Below are positions 9-47,998 of a stretch of DNA of 64,000 nt, one piece after another. Under the pieces are notes generated by a model that saw only the letters and a list, made by a program, of their open reading frames with translations, made no database searches and was not told where the DNA came from. A program made the translations under genes and the position numbers. Each line of letters starts with the position of its first letter. Position 1 is the stretch's first letter. Location of the stretch: positions 186,001 to 250,000 of IMG/VR virus record IMGVR_UViG_3300024308_000302, one strand, 5' to 3'.

Positions 9-464
9 TTAACGGTTCCAATAATTTTCACTATCAACCCAACTGCCGGGTTCAGGTGCTACAGTAGGATATGAATTCAAGTCTTTTGAACAAATTTCAA
101 AAATATCAGTAGTTCCTTGCGTGATTACATGGTTGCCTTTTTGTATACCTGCTGGCATGTTAGTTGGAAAACCATATAAATTATAGCCAATTATAGATCC
201 ATTTAATTGAGCTATCACATTACCCTTTTTATAAGGATATGTATCAGCATTATATTCAGCATAAAAAGTAGTTGAATTAAACGTGCATGGAACAGGTTCT
301 TCTGGGATTACAGGAGTTTCAGTCTCTAAACTTGAAATAATGATTGCATTATTAGGTAAATGTCCACCACGATCAAGTTCTAATGGGATTTTCATTACAA
401 AATCGGCAAAAACAAGCGGGCTTAAAAACAATAATGTTAATGTAAATAGCGATGTCTTTTTCAT
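9..464 (-). CDS. secreted protein, PLExxxGGxLP family member 1
   Basis: Signal peptide ending VFA, then DFVMKIPLELDRGGHLPNNAII, P/E/T linker and a Cys-bounded domain homologous to the three upstream paralogs. Confidence 0.85.
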   Translation of the reverse strand: MKKTSLFTLTLLFLSPLVFADFVMKIPLELDRGGHLPNNAIIISSLETETPVIPEEPVPCTFNSTTFYAEYNADTYPYKKGNVIAQLNGSIIGYNLYGFPTNMPAGIQKGNHVITQGTTDIFEICSKDLNSYPTVAPEPGSWVDSENYWNR

Positions 465-520
465 AATCTTAAAATAGTTATCCTAATAATATTATACACT
501 ATAATATATATATAACAAAT

Positions 521-545
521 AAAAAACCATCATAAGATGGTAATT
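521..545 (-). terminator. intrinsic terminator
   Basis: ACCATC-ATAA-GATGGT hairpin with an A-tract on the left (U-tract on the minus strand). Confidence 0.65.
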
Positions 546-571
546 ATTAAGACAACATATAATTAATATAG

Positions 572-1231
572 TTACAATGCTATATTAACGCCAACAGATT
601 CAAACTCTTGAATGATACCACTATTCCAATCATCACTTGGATTATGAACATCCGCCATACAATTACCATTGCTGGACATATAATACAAATTAGTAACAGT
701 AGCTCCATAACTTGAAGCAATGCCATCAACTGTACTTCTTTTATCCAAGCAAGCAGTTTCAGCAGCATTATCATTACCACCCCATAATGGATGATTTAAT
801 ACTGGTTTAGTATTTAAATTGTCACCACATATTTGATAATAGTTTGCTTGCATAATTGAATTCATTAATTTACCACGCTTAACACCAGAAGGAATCTGTT
901 GAGGATAACCAGCTAAATTATAGCCAATGAGATCACCATTGTAATAATATTCTGTATCGCCAACAGTATAAGGAGTTTCTGGTTTTCCAAGTTTAACAAC
1001 GACAATAAAATCACCATTGTCAGGATTGAAAAGACAATTAGAATCATTATCTGGGTTGCTTTCATTACCGTTACCAATGATAATACTATTATCTGGTAAA
1101 CGACCACCATTAAGAACTTCCAAAGGAACTTTAGCAGTATAAGTAGCTGCAAAAGATAATGGTGTTATCAATACAGTGAGAAGCATTATTTGTTTTGTTA
1201 TATTCATAAAAGAAAAGATATAATTATTCAA
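572..1231 (-). CDS. secreted protein, PLExxxGGxLP family member 2 (start possibly 1207)
   Basis: Signal peptide ending SFA; TYTAKVPLEVLNGGRLPDNSIII; two Cys-pair domains. Confidence 0.88.
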   Translation of the reverse strand: MNNYIFSFMNITKQIMLLTVLITPLSFAATYTAKVPLEVLNGGRLPDNSIIIGNGNESNPDNDSNCLFNPDNGDFIVVVKLGKPETPYTVGDTEYYYNGDLIGYNLAGYPQQIPSGVKRGKLMNSIMQANYYQICGDNLNTKPVLNHPLWGGNDNAAETACLDKRSTVDGIASSYGATVTNLYYMSSNGNCMADVHNPSDDWNSGIIQEFESVGVNIAL

Positions 1232-1264
1232 TAATATTTTAATATATCACAAAGGATAGTCAAT

Positions 1265-1288
1265 AAAAAAACATCCGAAGATGTTTTT
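1265..1288. terminator. intrinsic terminator
   Basis: AAAAAAACATC-CGAA-GATGTTTTT; UUCG loop on the minus strand. Confidence 0.8.
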
Positions 1289-1296
1289 ATTTTTGA

Positions 1297-1908
1297 TTAC
1301 ATACCAATACCAATACCAATTTCATTAAAATCATGTACAATACCATCCCAACCACCTTCTGGATACCTAACATCTGCCATACAATTACCACTGATGTAAT
1401 ATAACCCAGTAACAATCGTTCCATAATTTGCAGCAATAGCATCAGCTTCTGATCTCTTATTTAGACAAGCTTGTTGTTGAGGATCTGACGGAATACTTGG
1501 AAGCCCAGGTGGTGGTACGGCAGGATAGCTACCTAAGTTATCACCACAAATCTCATAAAGTTCACCATATTCATCAGTTGACATGAATTTACCAGCAGAT
1601 AGACCTGCTGGAACATTAACACCATCTTCTGTTGAATAACCAATGAGGTTAGAATTATATGAATAATAAGTTCCACTCTCTTCTATAATGACAAAAGTAC
1701 CAGAATTTTCATCATAATTATATTCACAATTACCTAATTCTGGAGTAGTTGGTTTAGGCGATGAAACATCACCAATGATAATGCTATTGTTTGGTAATCT
1801 GCCACCATTATTGACTTCTAATGGAATTTTAGCAATATAATCAGCAAAAGAAAAGTTTAAAGAAGCTATTAATGCAGCAAATAGAAGAGGTTTTTTTATA
1901 TTTATCAT
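1297..1908 (-). CDS. secreted protein, PLExxxGGxLP family member 3
   Basis: Signal peptide ending SFA; DYIAKIPLEVNNGGRLPNNSIII; same Cys pattern as members 2 and 4. Confidence 0.88.
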   Translation of the reverse strand: MINIKKPLLFAALIASLNFSFADYIAKIPLEVNNGGRLPNNSIIIGDVSSPKPTTPELGNCEYNYDENSGTFVIIEESGTYYSYNSNLIGYSTEDGVNVPAGLSAGKFMSTDEYGELYEICGDNLGSYPAVPPPGLPSIPSDPQQQACLNKRSEADAIAANYGTIVTGLYYISGNCMADVRYPEGGWDGIVHDFNEIGIGIGM

Positions 1909-1975
1909 TATATAAGTAATTGTTTTAATTAAATAATACTATGAGTTACATACAAGTCAATATATTTACAAAAAT

Positions 1976-1999
1976 AAAAAAGCCCCGAAGGGCCATTTT
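1976..1999 (-). terminator. intrinsic terminator (short stem)
   Basis: AAAAAAGCCC-CGAA-GGGC directly after the stop of 2007..2678. Confidence 0.6.
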
Positions 2000-2006
2000 A
2001 GAAAAG

Positions 2007-2678
2007 TTACATAGGAGTTCCTACACCAATTGCATTCAATTCATTAATAACATCATCGCGTGCTTGACCAGAAGGAAGATTGTAATCCGCAGTACAATAA
2101 ACAACATCACTGTCAGTATCCAAGTAAGCACTTAAATTTCTAAGTGTTGATCCATAACTTTCAATAATGCTTCTAACTTGAGGTTCTTTGTCATAACATG
2201 CAGTAATTCGAGGGTCTTCTGGTTCAGGCTCAGGCTCACCAAGATTAGGGGGCGTTACAGTCTCAAATGATGACAAATCATTAGCACAGATTTCAGAATA
2301 ATTAGCTCCAGTTTCAACATCAGTAAACATAACTTTACCACTACTAACACCGGCTGGAACATATGCAGGATACCCAGCTATATTGTAACCAATAAATTGA
2401 CCATTATATAAATATATTGTATCACCCGGAGCAAAAGGAATAAATGGATCTGACAAAGTGAATCTCACAACACTTGTGCCATTATAACGATCATATGCAC
2501 AGTTTCCCACTGGTGTTTCTGGATTAGTAGGTGTTGATGAACCATCACCTATTACAATACTACCTGTAGGCAAACTGCCACCTTGAAGGACTTCAAGAGG
2601 TATTTTAGCTGTATAACCAGCAAAAGAGTAAATTGGGATAATTGCAAGTGCAATTAATGTGAGTTTTTTGATTGACAT
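2007..2678 (-). CDS. secreted protein, PLExxxGGxLP family member 4
   Basis: Signal peptide ending SFA; GYTAKIPLEVLQGGSLPTGSIVI; PEPEPE linker before a second Cys domain. Confidence 0.88.
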   Translation of the reverse strand: MSIKKLTLIALAIIPIYSFAGYTAKIPLEVLQGGSLPTGSIVIGDGSSTPTNPETPVGNCAYDRYNGTSVVRFTLSDPFIPFAPGDTIYLYNGQFIGYNIAGYPAYVPAGVSSGKVMFTDVETGANYSEICANDLSSFETVTPPNLGEPEPEPEDPRITACYDKEPQVRSIIESYGSTLRNLSAYLDTDSDVVYCTADYNLPSGQARDDVINELNAIGVGTPM

Positions 2679-2766
2679 ATAAATAACATTATAATATTAG
2701 TTACCTAAAATATTAATCGATATTAGATATAAGTCAATGTCATATCCATAAATAAAGTTAACTGAA

Positions 2767-2991
2767 TTATTCTGTCAAAACTTGATTTCCATTTTTTTCA
2801 ACATAAGCATCAAAGATTGTACAAAGCTCATCAGACCAGCCATAAGCATTACCGATACCTTTATAAATATCCAATGTTTTTTGCTCATAGAAAGGAATGA
2901 TTGAATCACGCTCCATCATTGATAAAACAGAGTTATAGTCATAACCTAATGTTTCAGCAAAAGAAGCCACATCAGAAATAGAATTAAGCAT
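2767..2991 (-). CDS. small acidic hypothetical protein
   Basis: GGAG RBS upstream of ATG; 74 aa. Confidence 0.75.
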   Translation of the reverse strand: MLNSISDVASFAETLGYDYNSVLSMMERDSIIPFYEQKTLDIYKGIGNAYGWSDELCTIFDAYVEKNGNQVLTE

Positions 2992-3175
2992 AAATAAGTC
3001 TCCATAAAGAAACTAAGTATATCAAAAATTTAAAAAAATAGCTATCATTTAAATGGCCATTAATGACCAATTACCAATAATAAATCGTTATAAATGGTTG
3101 TATGTGGTTTATTAAAAGATTGTTTAAAAGAGAAAAATGTGATAAAATAAAGCAAATTAGAGTCGAGGTCATTGT

Positions 3176-4018
3176 ATGAAGCATTATGAACATGTCCAAA
3201 TTTTTGAATTTGATAAGCTCAATTATGAAAGTATTGAAAACAAAATAAATGCATCAAAAATGGACATCAAGTTTGATATTGATATTTTAAAATCAATTAT
3301 GACTTCATTCAAAGAAGAATTTTTGGTATCTCAAAAAGAAGATATTTCTATATTTGTAACTATTCAAATCACTAATAAAACAAAAAAAGAAATTTATATA
3401 GAATTCGATTCAAAAGAAGTGATTGCTCCACATATATCAATAATTAAAAAGAAATATGAAATAACAAAACGTCTTGATGAATTTAAACACGAAAATCCAA
3501 AAAAAATGTTTATTGGATTCATGGATAAATTAATGGGTGAAGAAACATGTAGTTTAAGTGATAAGAATTACGAAGTTATAAGCCATGATACAAATAAAAA
3601 AATTCCTATTATTTTGAAAAATGCAAAATGGATAGAAAAACTAATAAAAAGCCCAGATAAATTATATACTTCAATTATTAAAAACGGAATTTATACACAT
3701 GAAAAAAGAGTTACTTCTGGAATGTTCCTTATTGACTATAACAAATATGTAATCAGAGTAAGGACTAAACTTAAACACGAAGTGCTAAACACAAAAGAAT
3801 CTGTATTATGTATTAAGATGGAATTATCATCACCAATATACTGTGAAATTACAATTTACGATCAAACTATTGTGATATATAAAAAGGATCTTGATAAAAT
3901 AAAGATTACTAATGTACAAAAGGCAATCTGTGCATTAATGGCAATGAAAGGTTTTGAGATAGATAGTTTTGAAGAGTTTTATGATGTATTGTTAATTGAA
4001 GAAATGAAACTTATCTAA
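3176..4018 (+). CDS. hypothetical protein, C-terminal M(-4) signature family (subgroup B)
   Basis: GAGG RBS; ends DVLLIEEMKLI; N-terminus resembles 37448..38281 and 43693..44514. Confidence 0.85.
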   Translation: MKHYEHVQIFEFDKLNYESIENKINASKMDIKFDIDILKSIMTSFKEEFLVSQKEDISIFVTIQITNKTKKEIYIEFDSKEVIAPHISIIKKKYEITKRLDEFKHENPKKMFIGFMDKLMGEETCSLSDKNYEVISHDTNKKIPIILKNAKWIEKLIKSPDKLYTSIIKNGIYTHEKRVTSGMFLIDYNKYVIRVRTKLKHEVLNTKESVLCIKMELSSPIYCEITIYDQTIVIYKKDLDKIKITNVQKAICALMAMKGFEIDSFEEFYDVLLIEEMKLI

Positions 4019-4035
4019 TTAGTTTAAACAAAAAC

Positions 4036-4064
4036 AAAAAAAAGAGCCGTGAGGCTCTTTTCTT
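4036..4064. terminator. bidirectional intrinsic terminator
   Basis: AAAAAAGAGCC-GTGA-GGCTCTTTT between convergent genes. Confidence 0.85.
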
Positions 4065-5459
4065 TTACTCTTTATCTAACAAAGTTGACATCAATCCAAT
4101 TGGTCGTCCAGTGGAACCATTATGGTCACTTGTACCAGCAATGTCTAAATGAACCCATTTTTCTTTTGGAGCAAATTCACGAAGGAAAACAGCACCATTA
4201 GTAGCACCAGCACCTTGACCTAAGCAAAGGTTATTTAAGTCTGCTACATCACTATCCAAGAAGTGTTTATAATCATCACTCAATGGAAGTCTCCATACAG
4301 TATCACCTGACTCAATGCCTGCTTCAATAAACAGTGCTGACAACTCATCATCTTCTGTAAATAAACCAGAGTGAACATGGCCAATAGCAGAAATAACAGC
4401 ACCAGTTAGCGTTGCAAAGTCAACAGTCAATGCACCATTGAATGTTTGAGCATGACAAAGAGCATCAGCAAGAACAAGACGGCCTTCTGCATCAGTATCT
4501 TCTACTTCAATAGTTTTTCCATTTTTTGCAGTAATAACATCACCCGGTTTCAAAGCACCTGCATCTGGCATATTTTCACAAGTTGCAATGATAGCAACAA
4601 CATTCTTTTTGGAATTAGTACGAATTGCATAAAGCAAAGTACCAAGAACGGTTGCAGCACCACCCATGTCACCTTTCATACGGCCCATGCCCTTCGATGG
4701 TTTGATAGAGATACCACCAGAATCAAAAGTAAGACCTTTACCAACTAAGACAATAGGATCATCACCTTCTTTGCCACCATTGTATTCAATAGTTAATAGG
4801 TGTCCTTCTTCTACTGAGCCTTTTGATACAGCATACAAAGATCCATAACCTTTTTCTTCAAGTTCTTTTCCACTTACAACAGAGACTTTAGTTTTATTAC
4901 TAAGTCCTGCAACTCGCTTGCCTTCTTCAACCAAAACAGTTGGGGTAAGATAATTTGATGGCATATCAATCAATTTCTTTTTAAGAAGAATTGCTTCTGC
5001 TAATGCAACGCCAAAAGACAGGTCTTTTTCAAAAGCTCCAATATCAGAAGAATCATTAAAAAGCAACGAAATATTTTTAGGTGTTACAGCAGTAGTGTTT
5101 GTTTTTGCTGACCAAGGAACAGAATTTTTAACAACAATAGATGATACAAGTTTTTTCATATCAATCAAATCTGAAATTACACAAATATCAGTAATATTTG
5201 ATGGTAATTTACTGATAGCGTTACCAATGGCATCTTCTACTTTTTTAGAATTTTTAGATAAGTGAACAAATGAGTAGTAAACACCAGAATAAAAAATAGA
5301 AAAATCTGATTTATCCAAATACTGGGTCAAATCTTTAGGAATATCAGGGTGAATATCAATCCCATCTTCACTAGATGAAAAAGTCGTTACAATTGCTTGT
5401 GATTTTGAAATGGCAGTAACGATTGAAACAGAAATGTTATTAAATTTATTGTCTAGCAT
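4065..5459 (-). CDS. pepA: M17 family leucyl aminopeptidase
   Basis: Motifs LVGKGLTFDSGG, MKGDMGGAA, DTDAEGRLVLAD, ATLTGA, WVHLDIAG; AGGAG RBS. Confidence 0.95.
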   Translation of the reverse strand: MLDNKFNNISVSIVTAISKSQAIVTTFSSSEDGIDIHPDIPKDLTQYLDKSDFSIFYSGVYYSFVHLSKNSKKVEDAIGNAISKLPSNITDICVISDLIDMKKLVSSIVVKNSVPWSAKTNTTAVTPKNISLLFNDSSDIGAFEKDLSFGVALAEAILLKKKLIDMPSNYLTPTVLVEEGKRVAGLSNKTKVSVVSGKELEEKGYGSLYAVSKGSVEEGHLLTIEYNGGKEGDDPIVLVGKGLTFDSGGISIKPSKGMGRMKGDMGGAATVLGTLLYAIRTNSKKNVVAIIATCENMPDAGALKPGDVITAKNGKTIEVEDTDAEGRLVLADALCHAQTFNGALTVDFATLTGAVISAIGHVHSGLFTEDDELSALFIEAGIESGDTVWRLPLSDDYKHFLDSDVADLNNLCLGQGAGATNGAVFLREFAPKEKWVHLDIAGTSDHNGSTGRPIGLMSTLLDKE

Positions 5460-5540
5460 ATAATCTCCTATAAATGCACAAGTATTCTACAGAAAAAAAA
5501 TGAAAACATCAAGAAATAAAAAACAATATAAGTGTAATTG

Positions 5541-5557
5541 GTGGTTATAATAACCAC
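5541..5557. promoter_or_regulatory. 17-bp perfect palindrome (candidate operator) overlapping a TATAAT
   Basis: GTGGTTAT-A-ATAACCAC in the divergent intergenic region upstream of pepA. Confidence 0.4.
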
Positions 5558-5755
5558 AAAAAAACATGCATTGTCTCTTTAAAATTGACAATTATGGTTA
5601 ATATAATTCGATTGGTAATCACACCATTACTATTGAGAAAAAAGGATTTTTTTAGTGTTTACATGTATAAAAAAAAGATTATAGTGTAAAAATATACTTA
5701 TACATATTAACTAATATTGTATAAGATATTAATTCATTTAAATATAAAAGGTTTT

Positions 5756-6109
5756 ATGAAAAAGTTAATAACAATTATCATAGTTATATCAATAATAAGT
5801 GTGTACTACATAGTACAGATGCCATTAAAAAAATATAAAGATGGTTCATTGGAAACTGAAAGCATAACAAACAGTTATAATACCTTAAAAATAACAACTT
5901 GTTTATATTCAAAACAAAACCATAATTGGAAAGTTAATAAAAAAACACAATCATCAAGTATAGTTTGGGATGAAATTAATGTTGTAAGTGATTTACCAAA
6001 AGGATTAAAAACTTATGTAGATGATGATGGAGTCAATTATATTAAAAATGGTTTACATAAAGACGTAGATGATACATATGAATGGTATGAAGTATGTAGA
6101 ACAAAATAA
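5756..6109 (+). CDS. divergent member of the PLExxxGGxLP secreted/membrane family (start refined to MKKLITII)
   Basis: Hydrophobic N-terminus; YYIVQMPLKKYKDGSLETESI is a degenerate motif; C-terminal YIKNGL...WYEVCRTK parallels YSKGAL...LYTICRDKI of the next gene. Confidence 0.75.
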   Translation: MKKLITIIIVISIISVYYIVQMPLKKYKDGSLETESITNSYNTLKITTCLYSKQNHNWKVNKKTQSSSIVWDEINVVSDLPKGLKTYVDDDGVNYIKNGLHKDVDDTYEWYEVCRTK

Positions 6110-6136
6110 AAATAAAAAAGATTAAAGGAGACTATT

Positions 6137-6523
6137 ATGAATAAAAAAATATTACTTACACTTATTATCTCGATAATAACTTATGCGGCAAACGCAGAAT
6201 ACTTAGCAACTTTTCCATTAGAAGCGAATAATGGTGGTACATTACCAAATGGAAGTATCAATATCGTTAAAAATGAAGCTCACGAACCAACAGAAGAACG
6301 TTGTCAATATGTATACAGCGACACATTGTCAGGAACTAGTGCATGGGCGTACAGAACCGCTGGAGCAAGAACTACATTAAGGTGGAATAAAGAAGAAGTA
6401 TTGCCACTATCAATAAATATACCTGATGAGATAACAATTAATGGATATAAATATTCAAAAGGGGCATTACAAACGCAATCAGGAGGGTATACATTATATA
6501 CAATATGCAGAGACAAAATATGA
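6137..6523 (+). CDS. secreted protein, PLExxxGGxLP family member
   Basis: AGGGAG RBS; signal peptide ending ANA; EYLATFPLEANNGGTLPNGSINI. Confidence 0.88.
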   Translation: MNKKILLTLIISIITYAANAEYLATFPLEANNGGTLPNGSINIVKNEAHEPTEERCQYVYSDTLSGTSAWAYRTAGARTTLRWNKEEVLPLSINIPDEITINGYKYSKGALQTQSGGYTLYTICRDKI

Positions 6524-6595: not shown

Positions 6596-7063
6596 TTATT
6601 CTGTTGATTGACCATAACTAACTGCAGTGATAGAGTTCTTTGGACTGCCATCAATAAGATGATCGGAGAAAGTGAGATAAATTAGCATTTTACGCTCTTT
6701 GTCAATAAATCTAACAACATGCAATTCTTTGAAAAGAATTGAACGTTTTGCAGAAAACACTTCTTGACCATTCTTTAAACCATCATCAAAAGAGATAGGC
6801 CCAGTCTTACGGCAAGCCACACCAGCATCAGAAGAATCAGCACTCAAACCAATAGCCCCGCCTACTCCACCACGTTTAGAGCTTGAAAGATAACAAGCTA
6901 CACCTTTGACTGCTGGGTCATCAAAAGCTGTCACAACAATCTTGTCATTTGGGCCGACCATTTGAAAAGAAGTGGAGACTTCACCAATCACTTCTGAGCC
7001 AAATGCAATGGCAGAAGACAGTACAAGAGCAATAGCAACGGCAGTTTTCTTCAAGAACATCAT
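6596..7063 (-). CDS. creA: CreA family periplasmic protein
   Basis: Signal peptide; DKIVVTAFDDPAVKGVACYLS, SDAGVACRKTGPI, EVFSAKRSILFKELHVVRF, LIDGSPKNS match the CreA pattern. Confidence 0.92.
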   Translation of the reverse strand: MMFLKKTAVAIALVLSSAIAFGSEVIGEVSTSFQMVGPNDKIVVTAFDDPAVKGVACYLSSSKRGGVGGAIGLSADSSDAGVACRKTGPISFDDGLKNGQEVFSAKRSILFKELHVVRFIDKERKMLIYLTFSDHLIDGSPKNSITAVSYGQSTE

Positions 7064-23565: not shown

Positions 23566-23585
23566 AAAAAAGAGGCTACTGCCTC
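23566..23585 (-). terminator. GAGGC-family terminator
   Basis: AAAAAAGAGGC-TACT-GCCTC; the TGA stop of 23584..25026 lies in the stem. Confidence 0.8.
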
Positions 23586-25026
23586 ATATTTTGTGTTTTA
23601 ATGGTTTACTTAATTCTTTTTCTTTAACTGAGTCATTTATTTTTTCATATATCTGATGAGCTTCTTTCAGAGATGTTGCTTCTGAAAGTTCCATTAGATG
23701 AACAAAATTAGTCACATTTAAGGTGTGAATTAGTTTAGGATAATCAAACTTGATTAAATCGGCCATTTCTTTTTCTTCTACATATCTAAAAATAGAACTT
23801 TCACGATTTAAGTTCATAACAATATTATTCTTTTCAAAATAATCTAAAACAGGTCTTATATGATCTTTATATTTTGAACGATCTACTTCCATTGATATAA
23901 CTGATTCAACATCACTACACAAAGTCAAAGAACCCTTTTTTTCTAACATGAGATGATGATAATAAACTTTGAAAAAAGAATTATCACCAGAAATATGAAC
24001 ATGGTTATCTTTTGTATTATTTATATAGTGCTTTGGCATGTATGAATAACCTTCTGTCAAAGCTGGTCTTGCTGAACCAATATAACCAACATCAAATAAT
24101 TCAAAATCAGTGAAACTATGTTGTAGTTCAACACCAGATGCTCGAATAGTGTTATCATCTGTCACAGTACAAGTTATATCATCAATAGATGTAAACCAAT
24201 CAGGGTAAGAATCTTTTACCAATTGAACAAACTTATTCAATTCAGGTGTGTCTAACAATTGTTGTTCTGTTTTTGAATTTAATAACATACCTAACTTCAT
24301 ACATTGTCTTCTTTTAAAAGGTTCAAAAGCTTCATCAAAAACTGTATAGTATTTATCCATCATTTCATTATGAGTACGAATTGCATCTGGTCTTGATGAC
24401 TCATAGCTAAAGTAATAATTATTATAAAGATCAAAAAGGTTATAAATTCTAAATTGTTTCAACAAATGCGTGTTAGCTTGAATAACAGAGATAACATTAT
24501 CAAGACCAGTTCTTACTGAACTTGAACGTTCTTTTTTTTCAGCAACAACTGAATCAAGATTTCTGAATTCTTCTACAAATCTAAACGCAGGTAATTTTTG
24601 TAAATCACTTTTAAGTTTAACAAGATCTAAGTCATCATGAAAAGCAAGTTCAAAATTGGTAATAAATTCTTTAAATCCTTTACTATCATTCAATGCTTTG
24701 TAAATTTTATTCAAATAATCAAAATCACTTTCTTGAATAACTGGAATATATTCTATTGAACTGGCCACATCTCTATCCATGTTTTTAAAAATATTGGAAT
24801 CATCTTCTTTATAAATCAATTTAGAATAGTTCTTTAATAATATAGGATATCCTTCGTTGTTGGTCTTAACTAAAGAAAAATCATAAAGTCCTTTCATAAA
24901 AGTTTCATTAGTGAATTTTAAAGCAGCATAATAATCAAAATTTTGGTAAGTTCCATCATTTATATTATGTTCTTCTTTAAAATCATTGAGTAGATTTAAA
25001 TAATCATTATAATTGGCTTTTTTCAT
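23584..25026 (-). CDS. hypothetical protein, gene B of duplicated operon (paralog of 44593..46089)
   Basis: ATGA-coupled to the upstream gene; shares DDNTIRASG and HISGDNSFFK with its paralog. Confidence 0.85.
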   Translation of the reverse strand: MKKANYNDYLNLLNDFKEEHNINDGTYQNFDYYAALKFTNETFMKGLYDFSLVKTNNEGYPILLKNYSKLIYKEDDSNIFKNMDRDVASSIEYIPVIQESDFDYLNKIYKALNDSKGFKEFITNFELAFHDDLDLVKLKSDLQKLPAFRFVEEFRNLDSVVAEKKERSSSVRTGLDNVISVIQANTHLLKQFRIYNLFDLYNNYYFSYESSRPDAIRTHNEMMDKYYTVFDEAFEPFKRRQCMKLGMLLNSKTEQQLLDTPELNKFVQLVKDSYPDWFTSIDDITCTVTDDNTIRASGVELQHSFTDFELFDVGYIGSARPALTEGYSYMPKHYINNTKDNHVHISGDNSFFKVYYHHLMLEKKGSLTLCSDVESVISMEVDRSKYKDHIRPVLDYFEKNNIVMNLNRESSIFRYVEEKEMADLIKFDYPKLIHTLNVTNFVHLMELSEATSLKEAHQIYEKINDSVKEKELSKPLKHKI

Positions 25027-26924
25027 GCGACTCTCTGTTTAAATTGTTTTTTATTTTGTGTACTATTTTCTTCTACTATGCCTAACATGTTTTTTAATTT
25101 TTCAACTGAATCATCATCTAGGACATGTCTATCTTTATTTGTATACAATGTTGCATTATATGCCTGCTCAAATCTTATATCTTTATCATAAACACGATCA
25201 TCATTTTTGTAATGCATGGCATAATCTTCACCATTAGGCTTAATAGTAAATCCAATCATGGAGGATATATCAGAAGACGCCTTATTAAAGTCATACATAA
25301 TATATTGACGATTAGAACATTTAACTTTTGATTCATCTTCAAGTGTATATGTTGATCCTGTGTTGGTTACATATTGTTCAAAGTAATCTAAATCACGAAC
25401 AATACACCATGAAGTAGATCCAAAAGCTTGACATTGCTCATGAGTTTTTATCTCAAATGTAACAATGTTCTTATCATCATATATCTTTTCTATACCAAAA
25501 GATTCTAATTTGGCAGTCAGGTCTTCTTGTGTAAACTGATCAAAATGATTTAAAGTTCTTGTCAACATATTAATAACATCATCATTGTCTTTTAAAGCAG
25601 CTATCTTTCTACCAACAAATGTTTGCAATTGTGATGTTGTAACATTATTGTCATATAATGATTTAAAGTGGGGTTCTGTTTCATCATTGAAATGATGTTT
25701 ATATTTAGAACTCAGAATACTATAAGCGAACTGCTTTATTTTATTACGTGCAACAATATGATTGATTTCATCATCAATTGCCTCAAAAGACTTGTCTTTG
25801 AAATTATTCAAATCAAAATTATACTGTTTTAAAACAGCATGATTCTCCAATAATGATTGCACGGCTTTAATGCCATTAGCATATTTTTTTTCTTCAAGTA
25901 TTTTTTGTTGGAAGAATGGAACACTTTTTGGTTTCTTTCTTAATAAGTAGGCAACAGCATCAAGATGAAGTTCTTTCGTGAACTTTTCTAAGGTTTCATT
26001 ATCTTTTATAGTATGATACTGATTATCTTTTCTATAAACTAAACTCTTATCATCAAAGTAATAAACCTTGTCTATCTTTTGAGAGGCAGTAAAAGTTATA
26101 TCAAATACAGAACTATCAGTTAAAAGTTTAGTGGCTAAAAATGATTCAACAGAGCTATCAGATAAATTAGAAGAAGCATCTCTAATAAAAATATCAGCTT
26201 TAGACATGAAAAAGTCAGGATCATACTTTGTTAAAATAAACTTTACTTTATCATTGAATTCTTTATTTTCTTTTTCATATTTAATCAATAGATCAGAAAA
26301 ATCTTGAGTATTTATTGAATTTTGAACATAATCATTGATATATTTAAAAAGATACTTTCTTTCATCTTCATGAATAAAAGAAATACTCAACTCATCAAGT
26401 AAATTATAATAGGTATTTATAAAAGTATTAAATTTATTATATGTATCAACAATTTTTATACCTAATTCCATTATTTCATAATGGTTGTCATCTAAATTGT
26501 GAACATCTTCAATACTGAGTTCATTATCATAGCCATCAAAATTTTGTAATTTATTTTGAACTAAAGTACGCCATTCTCTATTCAAGGCATAATTACGTTC
26601 AGTAAAAGAAGAAATAGATGAAAACTTTCTTTCTGGTTGTGGATAAACTTGTGGCATATAAACCAAAAGAGCATCAATTGATGTAATTTTTGTAATATCT
26701 GTATCTTGGATAGAAGAAACAATACCTATTTTTTCATAAACTAATTTACTCAAAGTTGCATTTTTATCAACAGGCTTAGCATTAAGTTCGCTTTGAGAAA
26801 ACTCTGGGATAAATGTCATTTCATTATAGTTTAAATGAATATCATCATCCATGTGAAGATCAGCAGTGTATATTCTTAGATCATTTAATTTTTCAATCTG
26901 TTTTAAATTCTCATTTAATTCCAT
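25023..26924 (-). CDS. gene A of duplicated operon; C-terminal FGSxSWCIVRD domain (PcfJ-like, tentative)
   Basis: Shares LKQYNFDLN, KIKQFAYSILSSKYKHHFN and AFGSTSWCIVRD with 46086..47924. Confidence 0.82.
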   Translation of the reverse strand: MELNENLKQIEKLNDLRIYTADLHMDDDIHLNYNEMTFIPEFSQSELNAKPVDKNATLSKLVYEKIGIVSSIQDTDITKITSIDALLVYMPQVYPQPERKFSSISSFTERNYALNREWRTLVQNKLQNFDGYDNELSIEDVHNLDDNHYEIMELGIKIVDTYNKFNTFINTYYNLLDELSISFIHEDERKYLFKYINDYVQNSINTQDFSDLLIKYEKENKEFNDKVKFILTKYDPDFFMSKADIFIRDASSNLSDSSVESFLATKLLTDSSVFDITFTASQKIDKVYYFDDKSLVYRKDNQYHTIKDNETLEKFTKELHLDAVAYLLRKKPKSVPFFQQKILEEKKYANGIKAVQSLLENHAVLKQYNFDLNNFKDKSFEAIDDEINHIVARNKIKQFAYSILSSKYKHHFNDETEPHFKSLYDNNVTTSQLQTFVGRKIAALKDNDDVINMLTRTLNHFDQFTQEDLTAKLESFGIEKIYDDKNIVTFEIKTHEQCQAFGSTSWCIVRDLDYFEQYVTNTGSTYTLEDESKVKCSNRQYIMYDFNKASSDISSMIGFTIKPNGEDYAMHYKNDDRVYDKDIRFEQAYNATLYTNKDRHVLDDDSVEKLKNMLGIVEENSTQNKKQFKQRVA

Positions 26925-27328: not shown

Positions 27329-27988
27329 TCAAACTTTAGTCATCTGCAAAATAATATGATCTTTCAATCTGATGTCATTTAAATTTATGTTAAGTGGTTG
27401 GCAAGCAAATTCAATTAAAAATGTATCAATCATATGTTGTAGTGATAGATAAGTATAAATATCTTTTCCAATATAAGCAAGGAATCGATGAGACAACACA
27501 ACTTTATTATTTGAAATATCAAAAAAGAACCTGATATAAATTCCTATATGCATTTCACTGACAAAAGCATTAATGGGGTCTAATCGATTAGGCGTACCTA
27601 TTATTTTTTTTCTAATATATTTATTATAATTATTATCTGATGTATATTTTGTATTCTGAAATAAGAAACAGTTTAAAAATAGAAGCTTATTATCAATGTC
27701 ATGAATAGCAGTTTTAATATCAAGTTCGAGAGATTGTGTTAACGGAATATTAAAAATATCCTGAACAACATCAAAATCAACATCAGAAATAAAATCTATC
27801 ATGTAATCATCACCAGACTTAATGATTTCAAACCTACAGTGCTCATGTAATGAATCAAAGATCATAAAAAAGACAGGAATCTTATTTGGTGAATCATCAG
27901 TAACAATAGACATCGTATAGTCTTGACGATTATATTCAAGGTTTTTAAATTTTTCTTTTAATGCCTCTAACACCTTAAAATTTTTCAT
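27329..27988 (-). CDS. hypothetical protein, C-terminal M(-4) family (subgroup A)
   Basis: Overlaps the upstream stop; ends LNINLNDIRLKDHIILQMTKV. Confidence 0.8.
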   Translation of the reverse strand: MKNFKVLEALKEKFKNLEYNRQDYTMSIVTDDSPNKIPVFFMIFDSLHEHCRFEIIKSGDDYMIDFISDVDFDVVQDIFNIPLTQSLELDIKTAIHDIDNKLLFLNCFLFQNTKYTSDNNYNKYIRKKIIGTPNRLDPINAFVSEMHIGIYIRFFFDISNNKVVLSHRFLAYIGKDIYTYLSLQHMIDTFLIEFACQPLNINLNDIRLKDHIILQMTKV

Positions 27989-28802
27989 AATCTAAAATAT
28001 ACTCAACGATATTATAAAACATGTCAATAATAGGGTTCTTTGCAACAGCTTTATCACCATCGACCTCAAAGATAATCATACCATCATGGAGGTATTTAAA
28101 GAAGTAGGGTTCAAAGTCAGCAGTATCCCAATCAAAATCAGGATTGTTAAGTTCTTCTAATTCTTTTCCATAATCATTGTTTTCACCATAAACAACAAAG
28201 CCAGTTGGTGTGAATTCAACCATATACATGGTAGCAGATGCATAACAAGCAATCATAAATTTATTGTCATACATGTAAATATAGAAATCGGAATCACAAT
28301 AACCTTTAAGATTGGAATGATAGTCATCTTCCATATTCTTAACTTGTTTATGGTCAACAGCAAACTGATATAATTTTGGAATCATGAGTTTTAAATCTTT
28401 TTCATACTTCTCTTTTCTGGGATCATCAATAGCATTCATGCCATTCTGAACAGCCGTTAAGACATTTTCTACTGAAAAGTTAGTATATTTAGCAATGATT
28501 GTTGCAAAATAAAATACATTATGACCAACAATATTGGCAAAAATACCATCATTTTTAAATGCAGAACCTAATGCATACATATAATTGTTACTTTCATTGG
28601 TAGACATCAATGTTTGTAAAGTAATATCAGGATCAGTAATTTGAACAATATAAAAGTCTCTATCAAAATAATACACATCAAAATAAGTGTAATGCATCAC
28701 ACGAGACTGGTTTACCTTAATGATATCTTTAATCAAATTAGACGCAATACAATTGAAAATAGTTAGAGCGTTATCGAAAAAACTTGGGTTTACAAGATAC
28801 AT
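27975..28802 (-). CDS. hypothetical protein
   Basis: GGAG RBS; 275 aa. Confidence 0.8.
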   Translation of the reverse strand: MYLVNPSFFDNALTIFNCIASNLIKDIIKVNQSRVMHYTYFDVYYFDRDFYIVQITDPDITLQTLMSTNESNNYMYALGSAFKNDGIFANIVGHNVFYFATIIAKYTNFSVENVLTAVQNGMNAIDDPRKEKYEKDLKLMIPKLYQFAVDHKQVKNMEDDYHSNLKGYCDSDFYIYMYDNKFMIACYASATMYMVEFTPTGFVVYGENNDYGKELEELNNPDFDWDTADFEPYFFKYLHDGMIIFEVDGDKAVAKNPIIDMFYNIVEYILDYEKF

Positions 28803-41077: not shown

Positions 41078-41097
41078 AAAAAAGGCCAAAGCCTTTT
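41078..41097 (-). terminator. intrinsic terminator
   Basis: AAAAAAGGC-CAAA-GCCTTTT abutting the stop at 41096. Confidence 0.75.
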
Positions 41098-41623
41098 ATT
41101 TGTTTGTTAGGTATTTACCTATGAATGTAATAACAAGTTGAGTACCAACTTCTGTTTGTATTTCACCTAAACCATCATATGGAGAAACACTACCAGTAAT
41201 CTCAGTAGCTGATATCTGAACAACACATGTATAAGGCCCAGTGCCTGTACAATTTTGATATGGAATTGATATATTGCCATACACTAATCCCATACCACTT
41301 ACTTCCTCAAGAGTCACAGAATCTATAACAATTTTGTTTGTAGTAGTCAATGTATACGTCACTGTATTTTTATCAACTAATCCTGCTGGTGTTTGAGCAG
41401 TGATGATAGCATTGGTTGATGGAGTGTCACCAAAAGAACCACCTGTATCCACATAAGTAGGAGTCTCAGGGTCAGTAGGCGTCTCTGAATTACTTAATAT
41501 AAATTGTATTGAATTAACTGGAAGAGAACCACCATTAACCTGCTCAAGTGGGACTTGAACTTGATAATCGGCATAGACACAACTTGAAGCAAGCAAAGCA
41601 ATAGAAGTAATTAACTTTTTCAT
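41096..41623 (-). CDS. secreted protein, PLExxxGGxLP family member with an unrelated C-terminal domain
   Basis: AAGGA RBS; signal peptide ending VYA; DYQVQVPLEQVNGGSLPVNSIQF; ETPTDPETPT linker. Confidence 0.88.
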   Translation of the reverse strand: MKKLITSIALLASSCVYADYQVQVPLEQVNGGSLPVNSIQFILSNSETPTDPETPTYVDTGGSFGDTPSTNAIITAQTPAGLVDKNTVTYTLTTTNKIVIDSVTLEEVSGMGLVYGNISIPYQNCTGTGPYTCVVQISATEITGSVSPYDGLGEIQTEVGTQLVITFIGKYLTNK

Positions 41624-44570: not shown

Positions 44571-44594
44571 AAAAAAGATGCCTAAGCATCTTTT
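44571..44594 (-). terminator. intrinsic terminator
   Basis: AAAAAAGATGC-CTAA-GCATCTTTT abutting the stop at 44593. Confidence 0.82.
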
Positions 44595-46089
44595 ATATTT
44601 TATTTTTTATCTTATTTTTAATTGTCTTCCCATCGTCAGTGCTCTTATAAAGTTCAAATGCTTCATCGTAAGATTTAGCTTCTGTAATAGCAATAGCCTT
44701 TAAGAAGTCTCCATTTTGATATAGAGATAACAAATTTGGATAATTGTTTTTTATCAAGTTCGCTAACTCATCTGGTTTAATATATGTCAATAAACTACTG
44801 TTTGCAGTATGATCTAAATGAAGGACAATTTTATGTTCTTGAAGGTAATCTAAAACAGGAGCAATATAGGCAAGTTTTTCTTCTGCTGTAGCAGTATAGG
44901 ATAAAGCTGAATCAATTACAAAACAAACTTTCAAATTATCTCGTTGTTCAATACATAAATTATGGTAATACATTTTAAAGAAACTATTATCACCAGAAAT
45001 GTGAATGTAGTTATAATCACTCTCTAAATATCTTTTAGATAAAGAATGATAACCATAAGTTAGACTTGGTTCGGCTGACAAAATAGAAATCTTGGGATCT
45101 ATTAAATCAAAATCAGCAGTCGTTTCAGACAAAGGAATACCAGAAGCTCTTATAGTGTTATCATCAATAACAATTTCCATCATAGAGTCTGAAACGGATT
45201 TAAACCATTCAGGACGATTATTTTCAATAAAACTAATAAAATCATTAAGAACTGGTGTATTTAGCATATCTTCTTCACTTTTAGCATTTGCCATTACACC
45301 AAGAACTACAGATTCTTTTGCCTGAAACAAATAGAAGTAATCATCAAATTCTTTATAGTAGTCATCCATAAGCTCTATATAAGTTTGATCAGCATCTATA
45401 ACAGTAATGTTAAATTTATGCTCAAATTTATGTGGTCTTAAATTAGCATCTAAAGGAATTTCTTTGTCCAACAAATCAATAATATTCTTAACGTAGAAGC
45501 TAACAGATTGAGCACTGACATCATTACTATTCATTACATCCTTAAAGCAATTAAAAGTATGACACAATTTAACAATAGGTAAATTTTGAATAGTATATGA
45601 AAAGTCAGTAAGATGATTTTTTTCACTAAATGCTAAATTGAATTTAGATATAAAATCTTTAAAACCATCACTATCATCTAATATATCATTAATAATTTTA
45701 ACCACTTGTTTATCTGAATTATTTAAAATCGGAATTGCATTAAAATCGTCGTTACGTGTTGGCTTTATTGAATTTAAAGTATCAGCAAGAGCTAAAGAAT
45801 ATTCATAGGCTTCATTTTCGTCTTCTGTTGGTTGCTTGGAATTTAACTTGGACTCAATAAATTTACCGTGTTCATTTTCTGTTAAAATTCTTTTTGATCT
45901 GTAACTTATGGCTAAAGGATTATCTTCTAAATCAGTTTTGGATAAACTGAGATCATAAAAGTCCTTTAATAATGTTGTTTTATAGAATTTTAAAGTTGAC
46001 AATTCATTGAAATAGTTGTCATTAATAGAATTAGACAATTTAAATTCTTCACGCAATTTTATAAAATCTTCTGCTTTTGCTTTTTTCAT
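44593..46089 (-). CDS. gene B of duplicated operon (paralog of 23584..25026)
   Basis: ATGA coupling; MKKA start; DDNTIRASG, HISGDNSFFK. Confidence 0.85.
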   Translation of the reverse strand: MKKAKAEDFIKLREEFKLSNSINDNYFNELSTLKFYKTTLLKDFYDLSLSKTDLEDNPLAISYRSKRILTENEHGKFIESKLNSKQPTEDENEAYEYSLALADTLNSIKPTRNDDFNAIPILNNSDKQVVKIINDILDDSDGFKDFISKFNLAFSEKNHLTDFSYTIQNLPIVKLCHTFNCFKDVMNSNDVSAQSVSFYVKNIIDLLDKEIPLDANLRPHKFEHKFNITVIDADQTYIELMDDYYKEFDDYFYLFQAKESVVLGVMANAKSEEDMLNTPVLNDFISFIENNRPEWFKSVSDSMMEIVIDDNTIRASGIPLSETTADFDLIDPKISILSAEPSLTYGYHSLSKRYLESDYNYIHISGDNSFFKMYYHNLCIEQRDNLKVCFVIDSALSYTATAEEKLAYIAPVLDYLQEHKIVLHLDHTANSSLLTYIKPDELANLIKNNYPNLLSLYQNGDFLKAIAITEAKSYDEAFELYKSTDDGKTIKNKIKNKI

Positions 46090-47924: not shown

Positions 47925-47998
47925 GTTTAAATTATTATTTGATTGTATTTTTATATTGTAACATATAAACAAGAAAAAAATAGACTAAAAAAAACAAT

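What the first reader, a model, noticed from the sequence alone, without database searches (positions are those of the whole stretch)
9..6523. Seven-member secreted family: constant N-terminal PLExxxGGxLP module plus swappable Cys-bounded domains
Seen: 9..464, 572..1231, 1297..1908, 2007..2678, 6137..6523 and 41096..41623 have a cleavable-type signal peptide followed at once by [YF]-x4-P-L-E-x3-G-G-x-L-P-x2-[SA]-I. A P/T/E-rich linker and variable C-terminal domains follow. 5756..6109 carries a degenerate version (YIVQMPLKKYKDGSLETESI). The cargo is modular. Member 1 has one Cys-pair domain, members 2-4 add a second, 5756 and 6137 share a different Y.KG...Y.[IV]CR domain, and 41096 has an unrelated beta-rich domain. 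Established: pilus subunits and tip adhesins use a constant N-terminal strand to dock onto a shared scaffold while the distal domain varies. Inference: this is a repertoire of interchangeable envelope or surface proteins (adhesins, receptor-masking or superinfection-exclusion factors) that plug into one partner.
Basis: partly seen in the sequence, partly recalled or inferred. Interest (0 to 1): 0.7.

Follow-up and report, generated by a model that had tools for sequence, protein, structure and literature searches.

The report
Exported proteins sharing a pilus-linked N-terminal tag
A large, undescribed family of exported bacterial proteins carries one near-invariant 23-residue peptide right after the signal peptide, joined to dozens of unrelated binding domains, and its genes repeatedly sit beside the tip adhesin (PilV) of conjugative type IVb pili, so the peptide is probably a plug that docks swappable cargo onto that pilus.

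Summary
All seven window ORFs have a signal peptide followed at once by [ED]-[YF]-x-[IV]-K-[IV]-P-L-E-x3-G-G-x-L-P-x-x-S-I, a Pro-rich linker and Cys-paired cargo. The 290-kb record holds three more full members and three or four short-motif ones.

A profile of the peptide finds 288 clusters among 1.84 billion representative proteins. Nearly all are short exported proteins with the peptide at the mature N-terminus. Their cargo falls into 66 BLAST-unrelated groups. No Pfam, NCBIfam or PHROG model covers the family.

In an AlphaFold2 model the peptide is not packed against the cargo. The cargo matches no known enzyme fold.

The main new fact is gene linkage. Full-motif members lie next to a PilV-type type IVb minor pilin (tip adhesin) at 4 of 6 loci examined, including a Pseudomonas aeruginosa island.

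Best reading (about 0.4): the peptide is a docking or secretion signal for the pilus tip, like the N-terminal signals of TcpF and CofJ, here serving a large repertoire of plug-in binding modules. Binding is inferred; the one complex prediction gave no answer.

The host element looks like a giant tRNA-rich megaplasmid rather than a demonstrable prophage.

The parts
9..464 (-). Member 1 (151 aa): signal peptide, FVMKIPLELDRGGHLPNNAI motif, P/E linker, one Cys-bounded beta domain
   Evidence: (E=4e-54)
572..1207 (-). Member 2 (211 aa from the ATG at 1207; the ORF is open to the TTG at 1231): full motif and two cargo domains
1297..1908 (-). Member 3 (203 aa): full motif and two cargo domains
2007..2678 (-). 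Member 4 (223 aa): full motif. In the AlphaFold2 model residues 1-58 are unpacked (pLDDT about 50). The beta domain (59-135) and the alpha/beta domain (155-220) have pLDDT above 90.
5756..6109 (+). Degenerate member (117 aa): YIVQMPLKKYKDGSLETESI with the family spacing. Its C-terminal Y..YEVCR end is shared with 6137..6523.
   Evidence: E=5e-6; called as 117 aa
6137..6523 (+). Member (128 aa): full motif. Its small cargo ends in Y.LYTICR; the same cargo type follows PilV in L138 (2369-2761).
41096..41623 (-). Member (175 aa): full motif, P/T/E linker and an unrelated beta-rich cargo (its own BLAST group of 4)

Best explanation
These are Sec-exported, modular extracytoplasmic proteins. Signal peptidase I cuts after an invariant Ala. 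That exposes a mature N-terminus, [ED]-[YF]-x-[IV]-K-[IV]-P-L-E-x3-G-G-x-L-P-N-G-S-I, read here as two short alternating-hydrophobic strands around a GG turn. A Pro-rich flexible linker ties it to a disulfide-bonded cargo domain of very variable fold (small Cys-bounded beta domains, BspA/internalin-like LRRs, pentapeptide repeats, a W..P..W..G..C..W.P repeat domain).

Proposed mechanism (inferred): the free N-terminal peptide is a docking and secretion signal. It is recognised in the periplasm by the PilV-type minor pilin that caps a conjugative type IVb (thin) pilus. In the same way the N-terminal peptides of TcpF and CofJ hook onto the TcpB and CofB tip. Pilus extension would then carry the cargo to the surface or release it. 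Many cargo genes with one tag would give the element a repertoire of plug-in binding modules for the pilus tip. That would diversify what the mating pilus sticks to without changing PilV itself.

Shown: the architecture, its export features, its breadth, its independence from the cargo, and its gene linkage with PilV. Inferred: binding to PilV, display at the tip, and an adhesive role.
For: 1. Conservation. P, L, E, G, G, L, P, S and I are each kept in 139 to 147 of 147 cluster representatives, with no indel. The profile finds 288 clusters, with the peptide at residues about 13-50.

2. Export. A at -1 in 143/147, A/T/S/V at -3 in 139/147, an aromatic residue at +2 in 146/147, and an even Cys count in 139/147 cargos. 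The linker has 13.8% Pro against 4.4% elsewhere.

3. Independent module. The cargo falls into 66 BLAST-unconnected groups. In the AlphaFold2 model the N-terminal 58 residues are unpacked while both cargo domains are confident.

4. Linkage to PilV.
- In the window's own record, the member at 122646-123410 lies directly upstream of a 511-aa protein with a prepilin N_methyl motif and a Shufflon_N domain. That protein is 63-67% identical to proteins NCBI names 'conjugative transfer pilus tip adhesin PilV' of P. aeruginosa.
- L105 (42% GC): PilV, then a member.
- P. aeruginosa island L133: a short-motif member, PilV, then a full-motif member with LRR cargo.
- L138 (1.86-Mb contig): PilV, then three exported proteins, two with the full motif.

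5. Covariation hint. The Pseudomonas megaplasmids pMPPla107 and pBASL58 (MPF_I) carry several Shufflon_N pilins, none similar enough to this PilV to be found by tblastn, and T2SSE ATPases. Their paralogs share a different N-peptide, ENIIRxxAP[IV], on the same cargo repeat. One of them follows the A24 prepilin peptidase gene.

6. Precedent. The TcpF and CofJ N-terminal signals bind the minor-pilin trimer, have a critical aromatic residue and differ by lineage (PMC9565799, PMC6048534). PilY1/PilC dock by adding a terminal beta strand to a minor pilin (PMC13533445).

7. Some cargos are LRR binding modules.
Against: - No physical evidence of binding.
- No type IVb machinery in the 290-kb record: T2SSE and secretin are absent, and only one prepilin is present. 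The rest of the 1.54-Mb contig could not be searched.
- Two PilV loci (L134 with two PilV genes, L135) have no adjacent member. None of the seven PilV-like genes of the Pseudomonas megaplasmids has one within 1.5 kb.
- Most members, including all seven in the window, are far from PilV.
- The peptide (about 23 aa) is longer and far more conserved across lineages than the known TcpF/CofJ signals (about 11 aa, lineage-specific). It shows no sequence similarity to them.
Confidence: 0.4

Rival explanations
1. The peptide is a sorting or anchoring signal for another envelope partner, such as a type II secretion pseudopilus tip, an outer-membrane protein, a secretin or peptidoglycan. The proximity to PilV reflects only shared residence in accessory regions of the same mobile elements.
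For: - Most members are not next to PilV, and no pilus machinery lies in the 290-kb record.
- There are at least ten members per record against one PilV.
- PilV loci without members exist.
Against: Four independent PilV-adjacent cases occur in backgrounds of 30% to 55% GC, including a small island whose only members flank PilV. That is hard to get by chance: roughly 3-6% per locus from gene counts.
Confidence: 0.3
2. The peptide is a recognition site for a processing or modifying enzyme (a propeptide, glycosylation at the N-G-S, cross-linking), or it acts within the molecule as a chaperone or plug. It is not an intermolecular docking tag.
For: - Very strong conservation of a short peptide is typical of enzyme recognition sites.
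- An N-G-S triplet is common in it: N in 95/147, G in 99/147, S in 139/147.
Against: - N and G are not invariant, and there is no acidic residue at -2 as in the PglB sequon.
- No conserved candidate enzyme was seen next to members.
- Cargo diversity argues against an intramolecular role.
Confidence: 0.12
3. They are products of a jumbo prophage: periplasmic superinfection-exclusion or receptor-masking factors, or virion-associated receptor-binding proteins.
For: - The record is filed as a provirus, 96% complete by CheckV.
- It has 35 tRNA genes, a T4-type RNA ligase, and one weak hit to a 'virion structural protein' PHROG family.
Against: - No terminase, capsid, portal or tail family among the 117 largest ORFs.
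- Only one true member in 2.9 million viral contigs, and none in 50,697 phage records.
- Members occur in a P. aeruginosa integrative island with a plasmid-type replicase.
- Tailed-phage virions assemble in the cytoplasm, so Sec-exported proteins with disulfides do not fit.
Confidence: 0.08
4. The members polymerise or dock by chaperone-usher type donor-strand exchange.
For: The hydrophobic residues alternate in both halves of the peptide.
Against: - No fimbrial, usher or chaperone Pfam hit in members or neighbours.
- The cargo domains are complete, compact and unrelated to each other, so there is no common acceptor groove.
Confidence: 0.04

Closest known systems
[quoted passage not shown]
   Same: - A Sec signal peptide, then a flexible peptide at the mature N-terminus with a key aromatic residue near the new end, then a linker and a folded domain.
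- The partner is the single large minor pilin at the tip of a type IVb pilus.
- The motif differs between lineages.
   Different: - One secreted protein per system there; ten or more per element and at least 66 cargo types here.
- The peptide here is about 23 aa and nearly invariant from 23% to 59% GC backgrounds.
- No sequence similarity to TcpF or CofJ.
- The pilus is the PilV (conjugative thin pilus) type.
- Binding is not shown.
PilV tip adhesin and shufflon of IncI1/IncI2 conjugative thin pili (PMC9045228, PMC10654706)
   Same: - A constant part joined to alternative distal binding parts that set what the mating pilus binds.
- The neighbour gene here is a true PilV relative (Shufflon_N and a prepilin motif).
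   Different: - The shufflon swaps C-terminal segments of PilV itself by DNA inversion.
- Here the variable parts are separate exported proteins with a shared tag, so any swapping would happen at protein level. No recombinase or inversion repeats were looked for.
PilY1/PilC tip adhesins docking by beta-strand addition to PilK-type minor pilins (PMC13533445)
   Same: Sec-exported adhesins with disulfides that join the pilus tip through a short terminal peptide.
   Different: There the peptide is the extreme C-terminus (6-10 aa) behind a conserved beta-propeller, in type IVa pili. Here it is N-terminal and there is no propeller.
pMPPla107 / pBASL58 megaplasmid family of Pseudomonas (PMC6482414)
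   Same: - Giant replicons (about 1 Mb) that are mostly hypothetical genes, with 44-54 partly repeated tRNA genes and a GC content below the host's.
- MPF_I transfer type and several PilV-like genes.
- Paralogous exported proteins with a shared N-peptide on the same W..P..W..G..C..W.P cargo repeat.
   Different: - Their N-peptide is ENIIRxxAP[IV], without GGxLPNGSI.
- Their PilV genes are not close enough to this one to be found by tblastn.
- 53-55% GC against 30% here.

Membership tests
T4bP-secreted proteins with an N-terminal secretion signal (TcpF/CofJ type) | Cleavable Sec signal peptide followed directly by a flexible N-terminal peptide with a critical aromatic residue | tested here: met
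   A at -1 in 143/147 and Y/F at +2 in 146/147. The N-terminal 58 residues are unpacked in the AlphaFold2 model.
T4bP-secreted proteins with an N-terminal secretion signal (TcpF/CofJ type) | Encoded with a type IVb pilus system or its minor pilin | tested here: inconclusive
   Adjacent to a PilV-type minor pilin at 4 of 6 loci. No ATPase or secretin in the 290-kb record. The rest of the contig could not be searched.
T4bP-secreted proteins with an N-terminal secretion signal (TcpF/CofJ type) | The peptide binds the minor pilin (trimer) | tested here: inconclusive
   One 1:1 complex prediction gave 'no answer'. A 3:3 model and any experiment were not possible.
T4bP-secreted proteins with an N-terminal secretion signal (TcpF/CofJ type) | Sequence homology to TcpF or CofJ | tested here: not met
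   No Pfam or NCBIfam family hits any member. The motif differs from FxxxYxSxS, SxGGAFT and YGF.
Chaperone-usher pilus subunits | Fimbrial Ig-like domain lacking a strand, with usher and chaperone genes nearby | tested here: not met
   No such Pfam hits in members or among 117 ORFs of the record. The cargo domains model as complete folds.
Type IV pilins / pseudopilins (the family itself) | Class III signal: G|[FML]TL[IL]E and a hydrophobic N-terminal helix | tested here: not met
   Members have SPase I type signals. The only prepilin motif in the record is in the PilV-like protein.
Bacterial lipoproteins | Lipobox with an invariant Cys at +1 | tested here: not met
   No Cys in the mature motif of any of the 147 representatives; +1 is E/D/G/A/N in 137 of them (E/D in 104).
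PilV shufflon-type tip adhesin (the neighbour protein P0005, not the family) | Prepilin N-methylation motif and Shufflon_N constant region | tested here: met
   N_methyl 18.6 bits and Shufflon_N 30 bits, above its cut-off. 63-67% identity to NCBI-named PilV.
PilV shufflon-type tip adhesin (the neighbour protein P0005, not the family) | Shufflon: Rci recombinase and invertible C-terminal segments | not tested
   Not looked for. Homologs vary in the C-terminal 15-25%.
Tailed prophage (the 290-kb record) | Terminase, portal, major capsid and tail genes | tested here: not met
   None among the 117 largest ORFs against PHROGs and Pfam; only RNA ligase, transposases and one weak 'virion structural protein' family.

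The most novel reading that the evidence does not exclude
The tag defines a 'trans-shufflon'. Giant conjugative elements, and small islands that ride on them, carry libraries of exported plug-in binding domains. Through one universal N-terminal peptide, all of them snap onto the PilV cap of the mating pilus. What the pilus grabs would then be reprogrammed at protein level. Small islands that carry only a replicase, their own PilV and one or two plug-ins would use this to retarget a helper element's pilus.
Probability: 0.25. Interest if true: 0.85.

Novelty: new variant of a known kind. Interest (0 to 1): 0.7.

Why it matters
Known pilus-tip secretion signals serve one protein per system and have no common sequence. 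This peptide is nearly invariant, occurs in hundreds of protein clusters from soil, water, marine and clinical-species genomes, and has no model in the three profile libraries searched (Pfam, NCBIfam, PHROGs).

If it docks on PilV, it would explain part of the 'hypothetical' load of megaplasmid-like elements. It would also add a protein-level way to vary the specificity of conjugative pili, which decide who receives plasmids. And it would give a ready sequence marker for finding such cargo.

A culturable test system exists: the P. aeruginosa island with PilV flanked by two members.

Tried and rejected
- Complex prediction of soluble PilV-like protein (residues 31-511) with the mature peptide of its neighbour (residues 23-60): 'no answer', score 0.00, controls not run. 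This counts neither for nor against binding. A 3:3 model was not possible (one job only).
- Fold searches with the member model against PDB and AlphaFold DB clusters: nothing with E below 0.01, all TM-scores below 0.4. The ESM Atlas look-up gave nothing usable.
- Pfam, PHROGs and NCBIfam on members: no family.
- tblastn of a member against phage records: none. Against plasmids: only the cargo repeat, in two Pseudomonas megaplasmids.
- Taxon placement through the M17 peptidase: best hits 33-46% identical, scattered over many phyla, so uninformative.
- Searching the whole 1.54-Mb contig for pilus genes: record not held.
Degenerate DNA patterns were used instead.
- Giant eukaryotic virus considered and rejected: clear Shine-Dalgarno signal at -11 to -8 and a prepilin gene.
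- Alternative genetic code considered because of two tRNA(CUA) genes. Not adopted: TAG is merely a rare stop (15 of 250), and members end in TAA or TGA with no open read-through.
- Papers naming the source samples: none found.
Full report
**1. The observation**

Six carry a signal peptide followed at once by [YF]-x4-P-L-E-x3-G-G-x-L-P-x2-[SA]-I. The ORF at 5756..6109 is a decayed copy with identical spacing (HMM E=5e-6).

A strict regex hits 6 times in the window, 9 times in the 290-kb record and never in 200 shuffles. Alignment A1 confirms the cargo layout. Members 1-4 share a first Cys-bounded domain, and members 2-4 add a second. The member at 6137 and the degenerate copy share a C-terminal Y..Y.[IV]CR end. 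The member at 41096 is unrelated.

The window is part of a 290,157-base record (window = positions 186001-250000). That record holds three further full members (94505-95023, 122646-123410, 178205-178972). It also holds short-motif relatives that keep only Y-x-[IV]-K-[IVF]-P-L-[DE]. Motif-region nucleotide identity among the tandem copies is 51-79%, so selection acts on the protein.

**2. How wide the family is**

A 38-column profile of the peptide was scored against 1.84 billion representative proteins. It gave 288 clusters at E<=1e-3 and 23 at E<=1e-10. Apart from a few long repeat proteins, they are 45-530 aa proteins with the match at residues about 13-50.

In 147 representatives the core has no indel:
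- P 147, L 145, E 146
- G 145, G 147, L 146
- P 141, S 139, I 142
- Y/F at +2 in 146

The residue before the tag is Ala in 143, and position -3 is A/T/S/V in 139. This is a textbook signal peptidase I site that leaves [ED]-Y as the new N-terminus.

The next 15 residues are Pro-rich (13.8% against 4.4%) and poor in hydrophobic residues. The cargo has an even number of Cys in 139 of 147. These are exported, disulfide-bonded proteins with a free, flexible N-terminal tag.

The cargo of 156 sequences falls into 66 BLAST-unconnected groups, 47 of them singletons. Some are BspA/internalin-like LRRs and one is a pentapeptide-repeat protein.

A degenerate DNA pattern found 30 loci in metagenome contigs, all true members, in contigs of 23% to 59% GC that include a marine (TARA) scaffold. 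No Pfam, NCBIfam or PHROG model matches. Where the sources give the proteins a name at all, it is 'hypothetical protein'.

**3. Structure**

An AlphaFold2 model of window:2007-2678 (16-row alignment) gives pLDDT about 50 for residues 1-58. It gives pLDDT above 90 for a beta domain (59-135) and an alpha/beta domain (155-220). The tag is therefore not part of the cargo fold. No solved or predicted fold matches with E below 0.01, so no known enzyme fold is found.

**4. The key new fact: linkage with PilV**

In the window's own record, the member at 122646-123410 lies directly upstream of a 511-aa protein (P0005). P0005 has a prepilin signal (KKTDG|LTLLETLISL), an N_methyl hit and a Shufflon_N hit above cut-off. 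It is 63-67% identical to proteins that NCBI names 'shufflon system plasmid conjugative transfer pilus tip adhesin PilV' in P. aeruginosa.

The same pairing recurs in three other backgrounds:
- A 49.9-kb element of 42% GC from an isolate genome: PilV-like gene, then a member.
- A P. aeruginosa island with a serine recombinase and a PF03090 replicase. PilV (P0175) is flanked upstream by a short-motif member (P0206) and downstream by a full-motif member with LRR cargo (P0205).
- A 1.86-Mb metagenome contig of 31% GC: PilV is followed by three exported small proteins, two with the full motif.

Two further PilV loci have no adjacent member: a 1.92-Mb contig with two PilV genes, and a P. putida island. 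That makes 4 of 6 loci. From gene counts the chance of such adjacency is a few per cent per locus.

**5. Relatives with another tag**

The cargo repeat W..P..W..G..C..W.P of several members also occurs in the Pseudomonas megaplasmids pMPPla107 and pBASL58. Paralogs there have a signal peptide, then a different shared N-peptide (A|ENIIRxxAP[IV]), then the repeat. One follows the A24 prepilin peptidase gene.

These plasmids are typed MPF_I and carry seven Shufflon_N pilin genes between them, plus T2SSE ATPases. None of those pilin genes has a member within 1.5 kb, and none is close enough to P0005 to be found by tblastn. A different tag with a different PilV type is what a cognate-pair model predicts, but this is only a hint.

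**6. Mechanism**

Two precedents exist. TcpF and CofJ are Sec-exported, and their first 11 or so mature residues, with an essential aromatic residue, hook onto the trimeric minor pilin at the type IVb pilus tip. The motif is lineage-specific (PMC9565799, PMC6048534). PilY1/PilC join the tip by adding a short terminal strand to a minor pilin (PMC13533445).

The tag here, read as two alternating-hydrophobic half-strands around GG at a free N-terminus on a flexible leash, fits either mode. I propose that PilV recognises it in the periplasm and that pilus extension displays or releases the cargo. This would give a repertoire of plug-in binding modules. This step is inference.

The single complex prediction allowed (1:1, PilV 31-511 with the peptide) returned 'no answer'. 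The PilV model itself is poor in its highly conserved region 219-366.

Weak points are the absence of pilus machinery in the 290 kb, the many members far from PilV, and the unusual length and universality of the tag.

**7. What the host element is**

Translation signals are bacterial: G enrichment at -11 to -8, and GGAG in 49 of 249 upstream regions against 0 in the control region.

The record is filed as a provirus inside a 1,539,155-base contig. None of its 117 largest ORFs hits a terminase, capsid, portal or tail family. Genes are small, mostly orphans, and almost all on one strand. There are 35 tRNA genes with many repeats of Leu-UAA, Arg-UCU and Met. The same gene style continues beyond the 'provirus' border.

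This matches the pMPPla107 megaplasmid family: about 1 Mb, mostly hypothetical genes, 44-54 partly repeated tRNA genes, GC below the host's (PMC6482414). I therefore regard 'prophage' as unproven and 'giant megaplasmid-like mobile element' as more likely. The host is unknown.

Near-identical DNA occurs in subsurface, food, soil, freshwater, silage, plant and wastewater runs.

Libraries labelled RNA-Seq cover the tandem genes in gene-sized patches with gaps between genes. This suggests transcription but does not prove it.

**8. Verdict**

The likely scaffold is the PilV tip of a type IVb conjugative pilus, not a chaperone-usher fibre or a virion. The family is undescribed. It is best filed as a new, much expanded variant of the N-terminal pilus-tip signal principle, pending a binding test.

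Noticed in passing
record positions 179840-179914 and 180849-180923 (L095:19840-19914, L096:849-923), just upstream of the window: Two tRNA genes with anticodon CUA (amber suppressor type) among 35 tRNA genes, all on the minus strand. TAG is a rare stop (15 of 250 ORFs), but nothing shows recoding.
   Followed up: partly
window 23584-26924 and 44593-47972 (minus strand): A duplicated two-gene cassette (633+480 aa and 628+498 aa). The large proteins are 48% identical and hit no Pfam or PHROG family. They are the largest ORFs in the window.
   Followed up: no
whole record, and L112 (the JGI contig beyond the record's start): The 'provirus' call looks doubtful. No capsid, terminase or portal was found, and the same orphan-gene style continues past the border. 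There a thymidine kinase, an SLT_4 lytic transglycosylase and a Tubulin/FtsZ_C protein are encoded.
   Followed up: partly
L133:1033-12492 (P. aeruginosa GCA_040628195.1 contig ABTLEY010000024): A small island with a serine recombinase, a methylase/BglII pair, a PF03090 replicase and PilV flanked by two tagged proteins, inserted next to coaBC-dut-algC-argB. It may be a mobilisable element carrying its own pilus-tip set. Islands with a similar replicase and PilV occur in L105 and L135.
   Followed up: partly
W02 (pMPPla107) 216801-219536 and 368926-370623: ORFs of 986 and 647 aa consist of about 7-10 tandem copies of the ~90-aa W..P..W..G..C..W.P domain, which is single-copy cargo in many tagged proteins. 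The domain has no Pfam model.
   Followed up: partly
window 2501 (residue ~59 of the 2007..2678 protein): In two wastewater libraries the contigs match the cargo part and then diverge exactly at the linker/cargo border. The divergent stretch encodes another P/T/S-rich linker. This may be a strain variant with a different front part.
   Followed up: no
window 6596-7063 (minus strand); also L100 and L101: A CreA-family exported protein (PF05981, E=2e-49) lies beside the family genes. CreA recurs in a distant relative of the element. In the closer relative L099 the same slot holds a WHH/colicin-DNase toxin with a likely immunity gene.
   Followed up: no
record 264692-266449 and one further ORF: Two TnpB/Cas12f1-like (OrfB_IS605) genes and IS-type transposases lie in the record.
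   Followed up: no
record 27429-28667 (minus strand): A 412-aa exported protein starts MLKKIIIPIAVLSVGCPMAATYSAKFFLDD. This looks like a further decayed form of the tag (YSAKFFLD).
   Followed up: no
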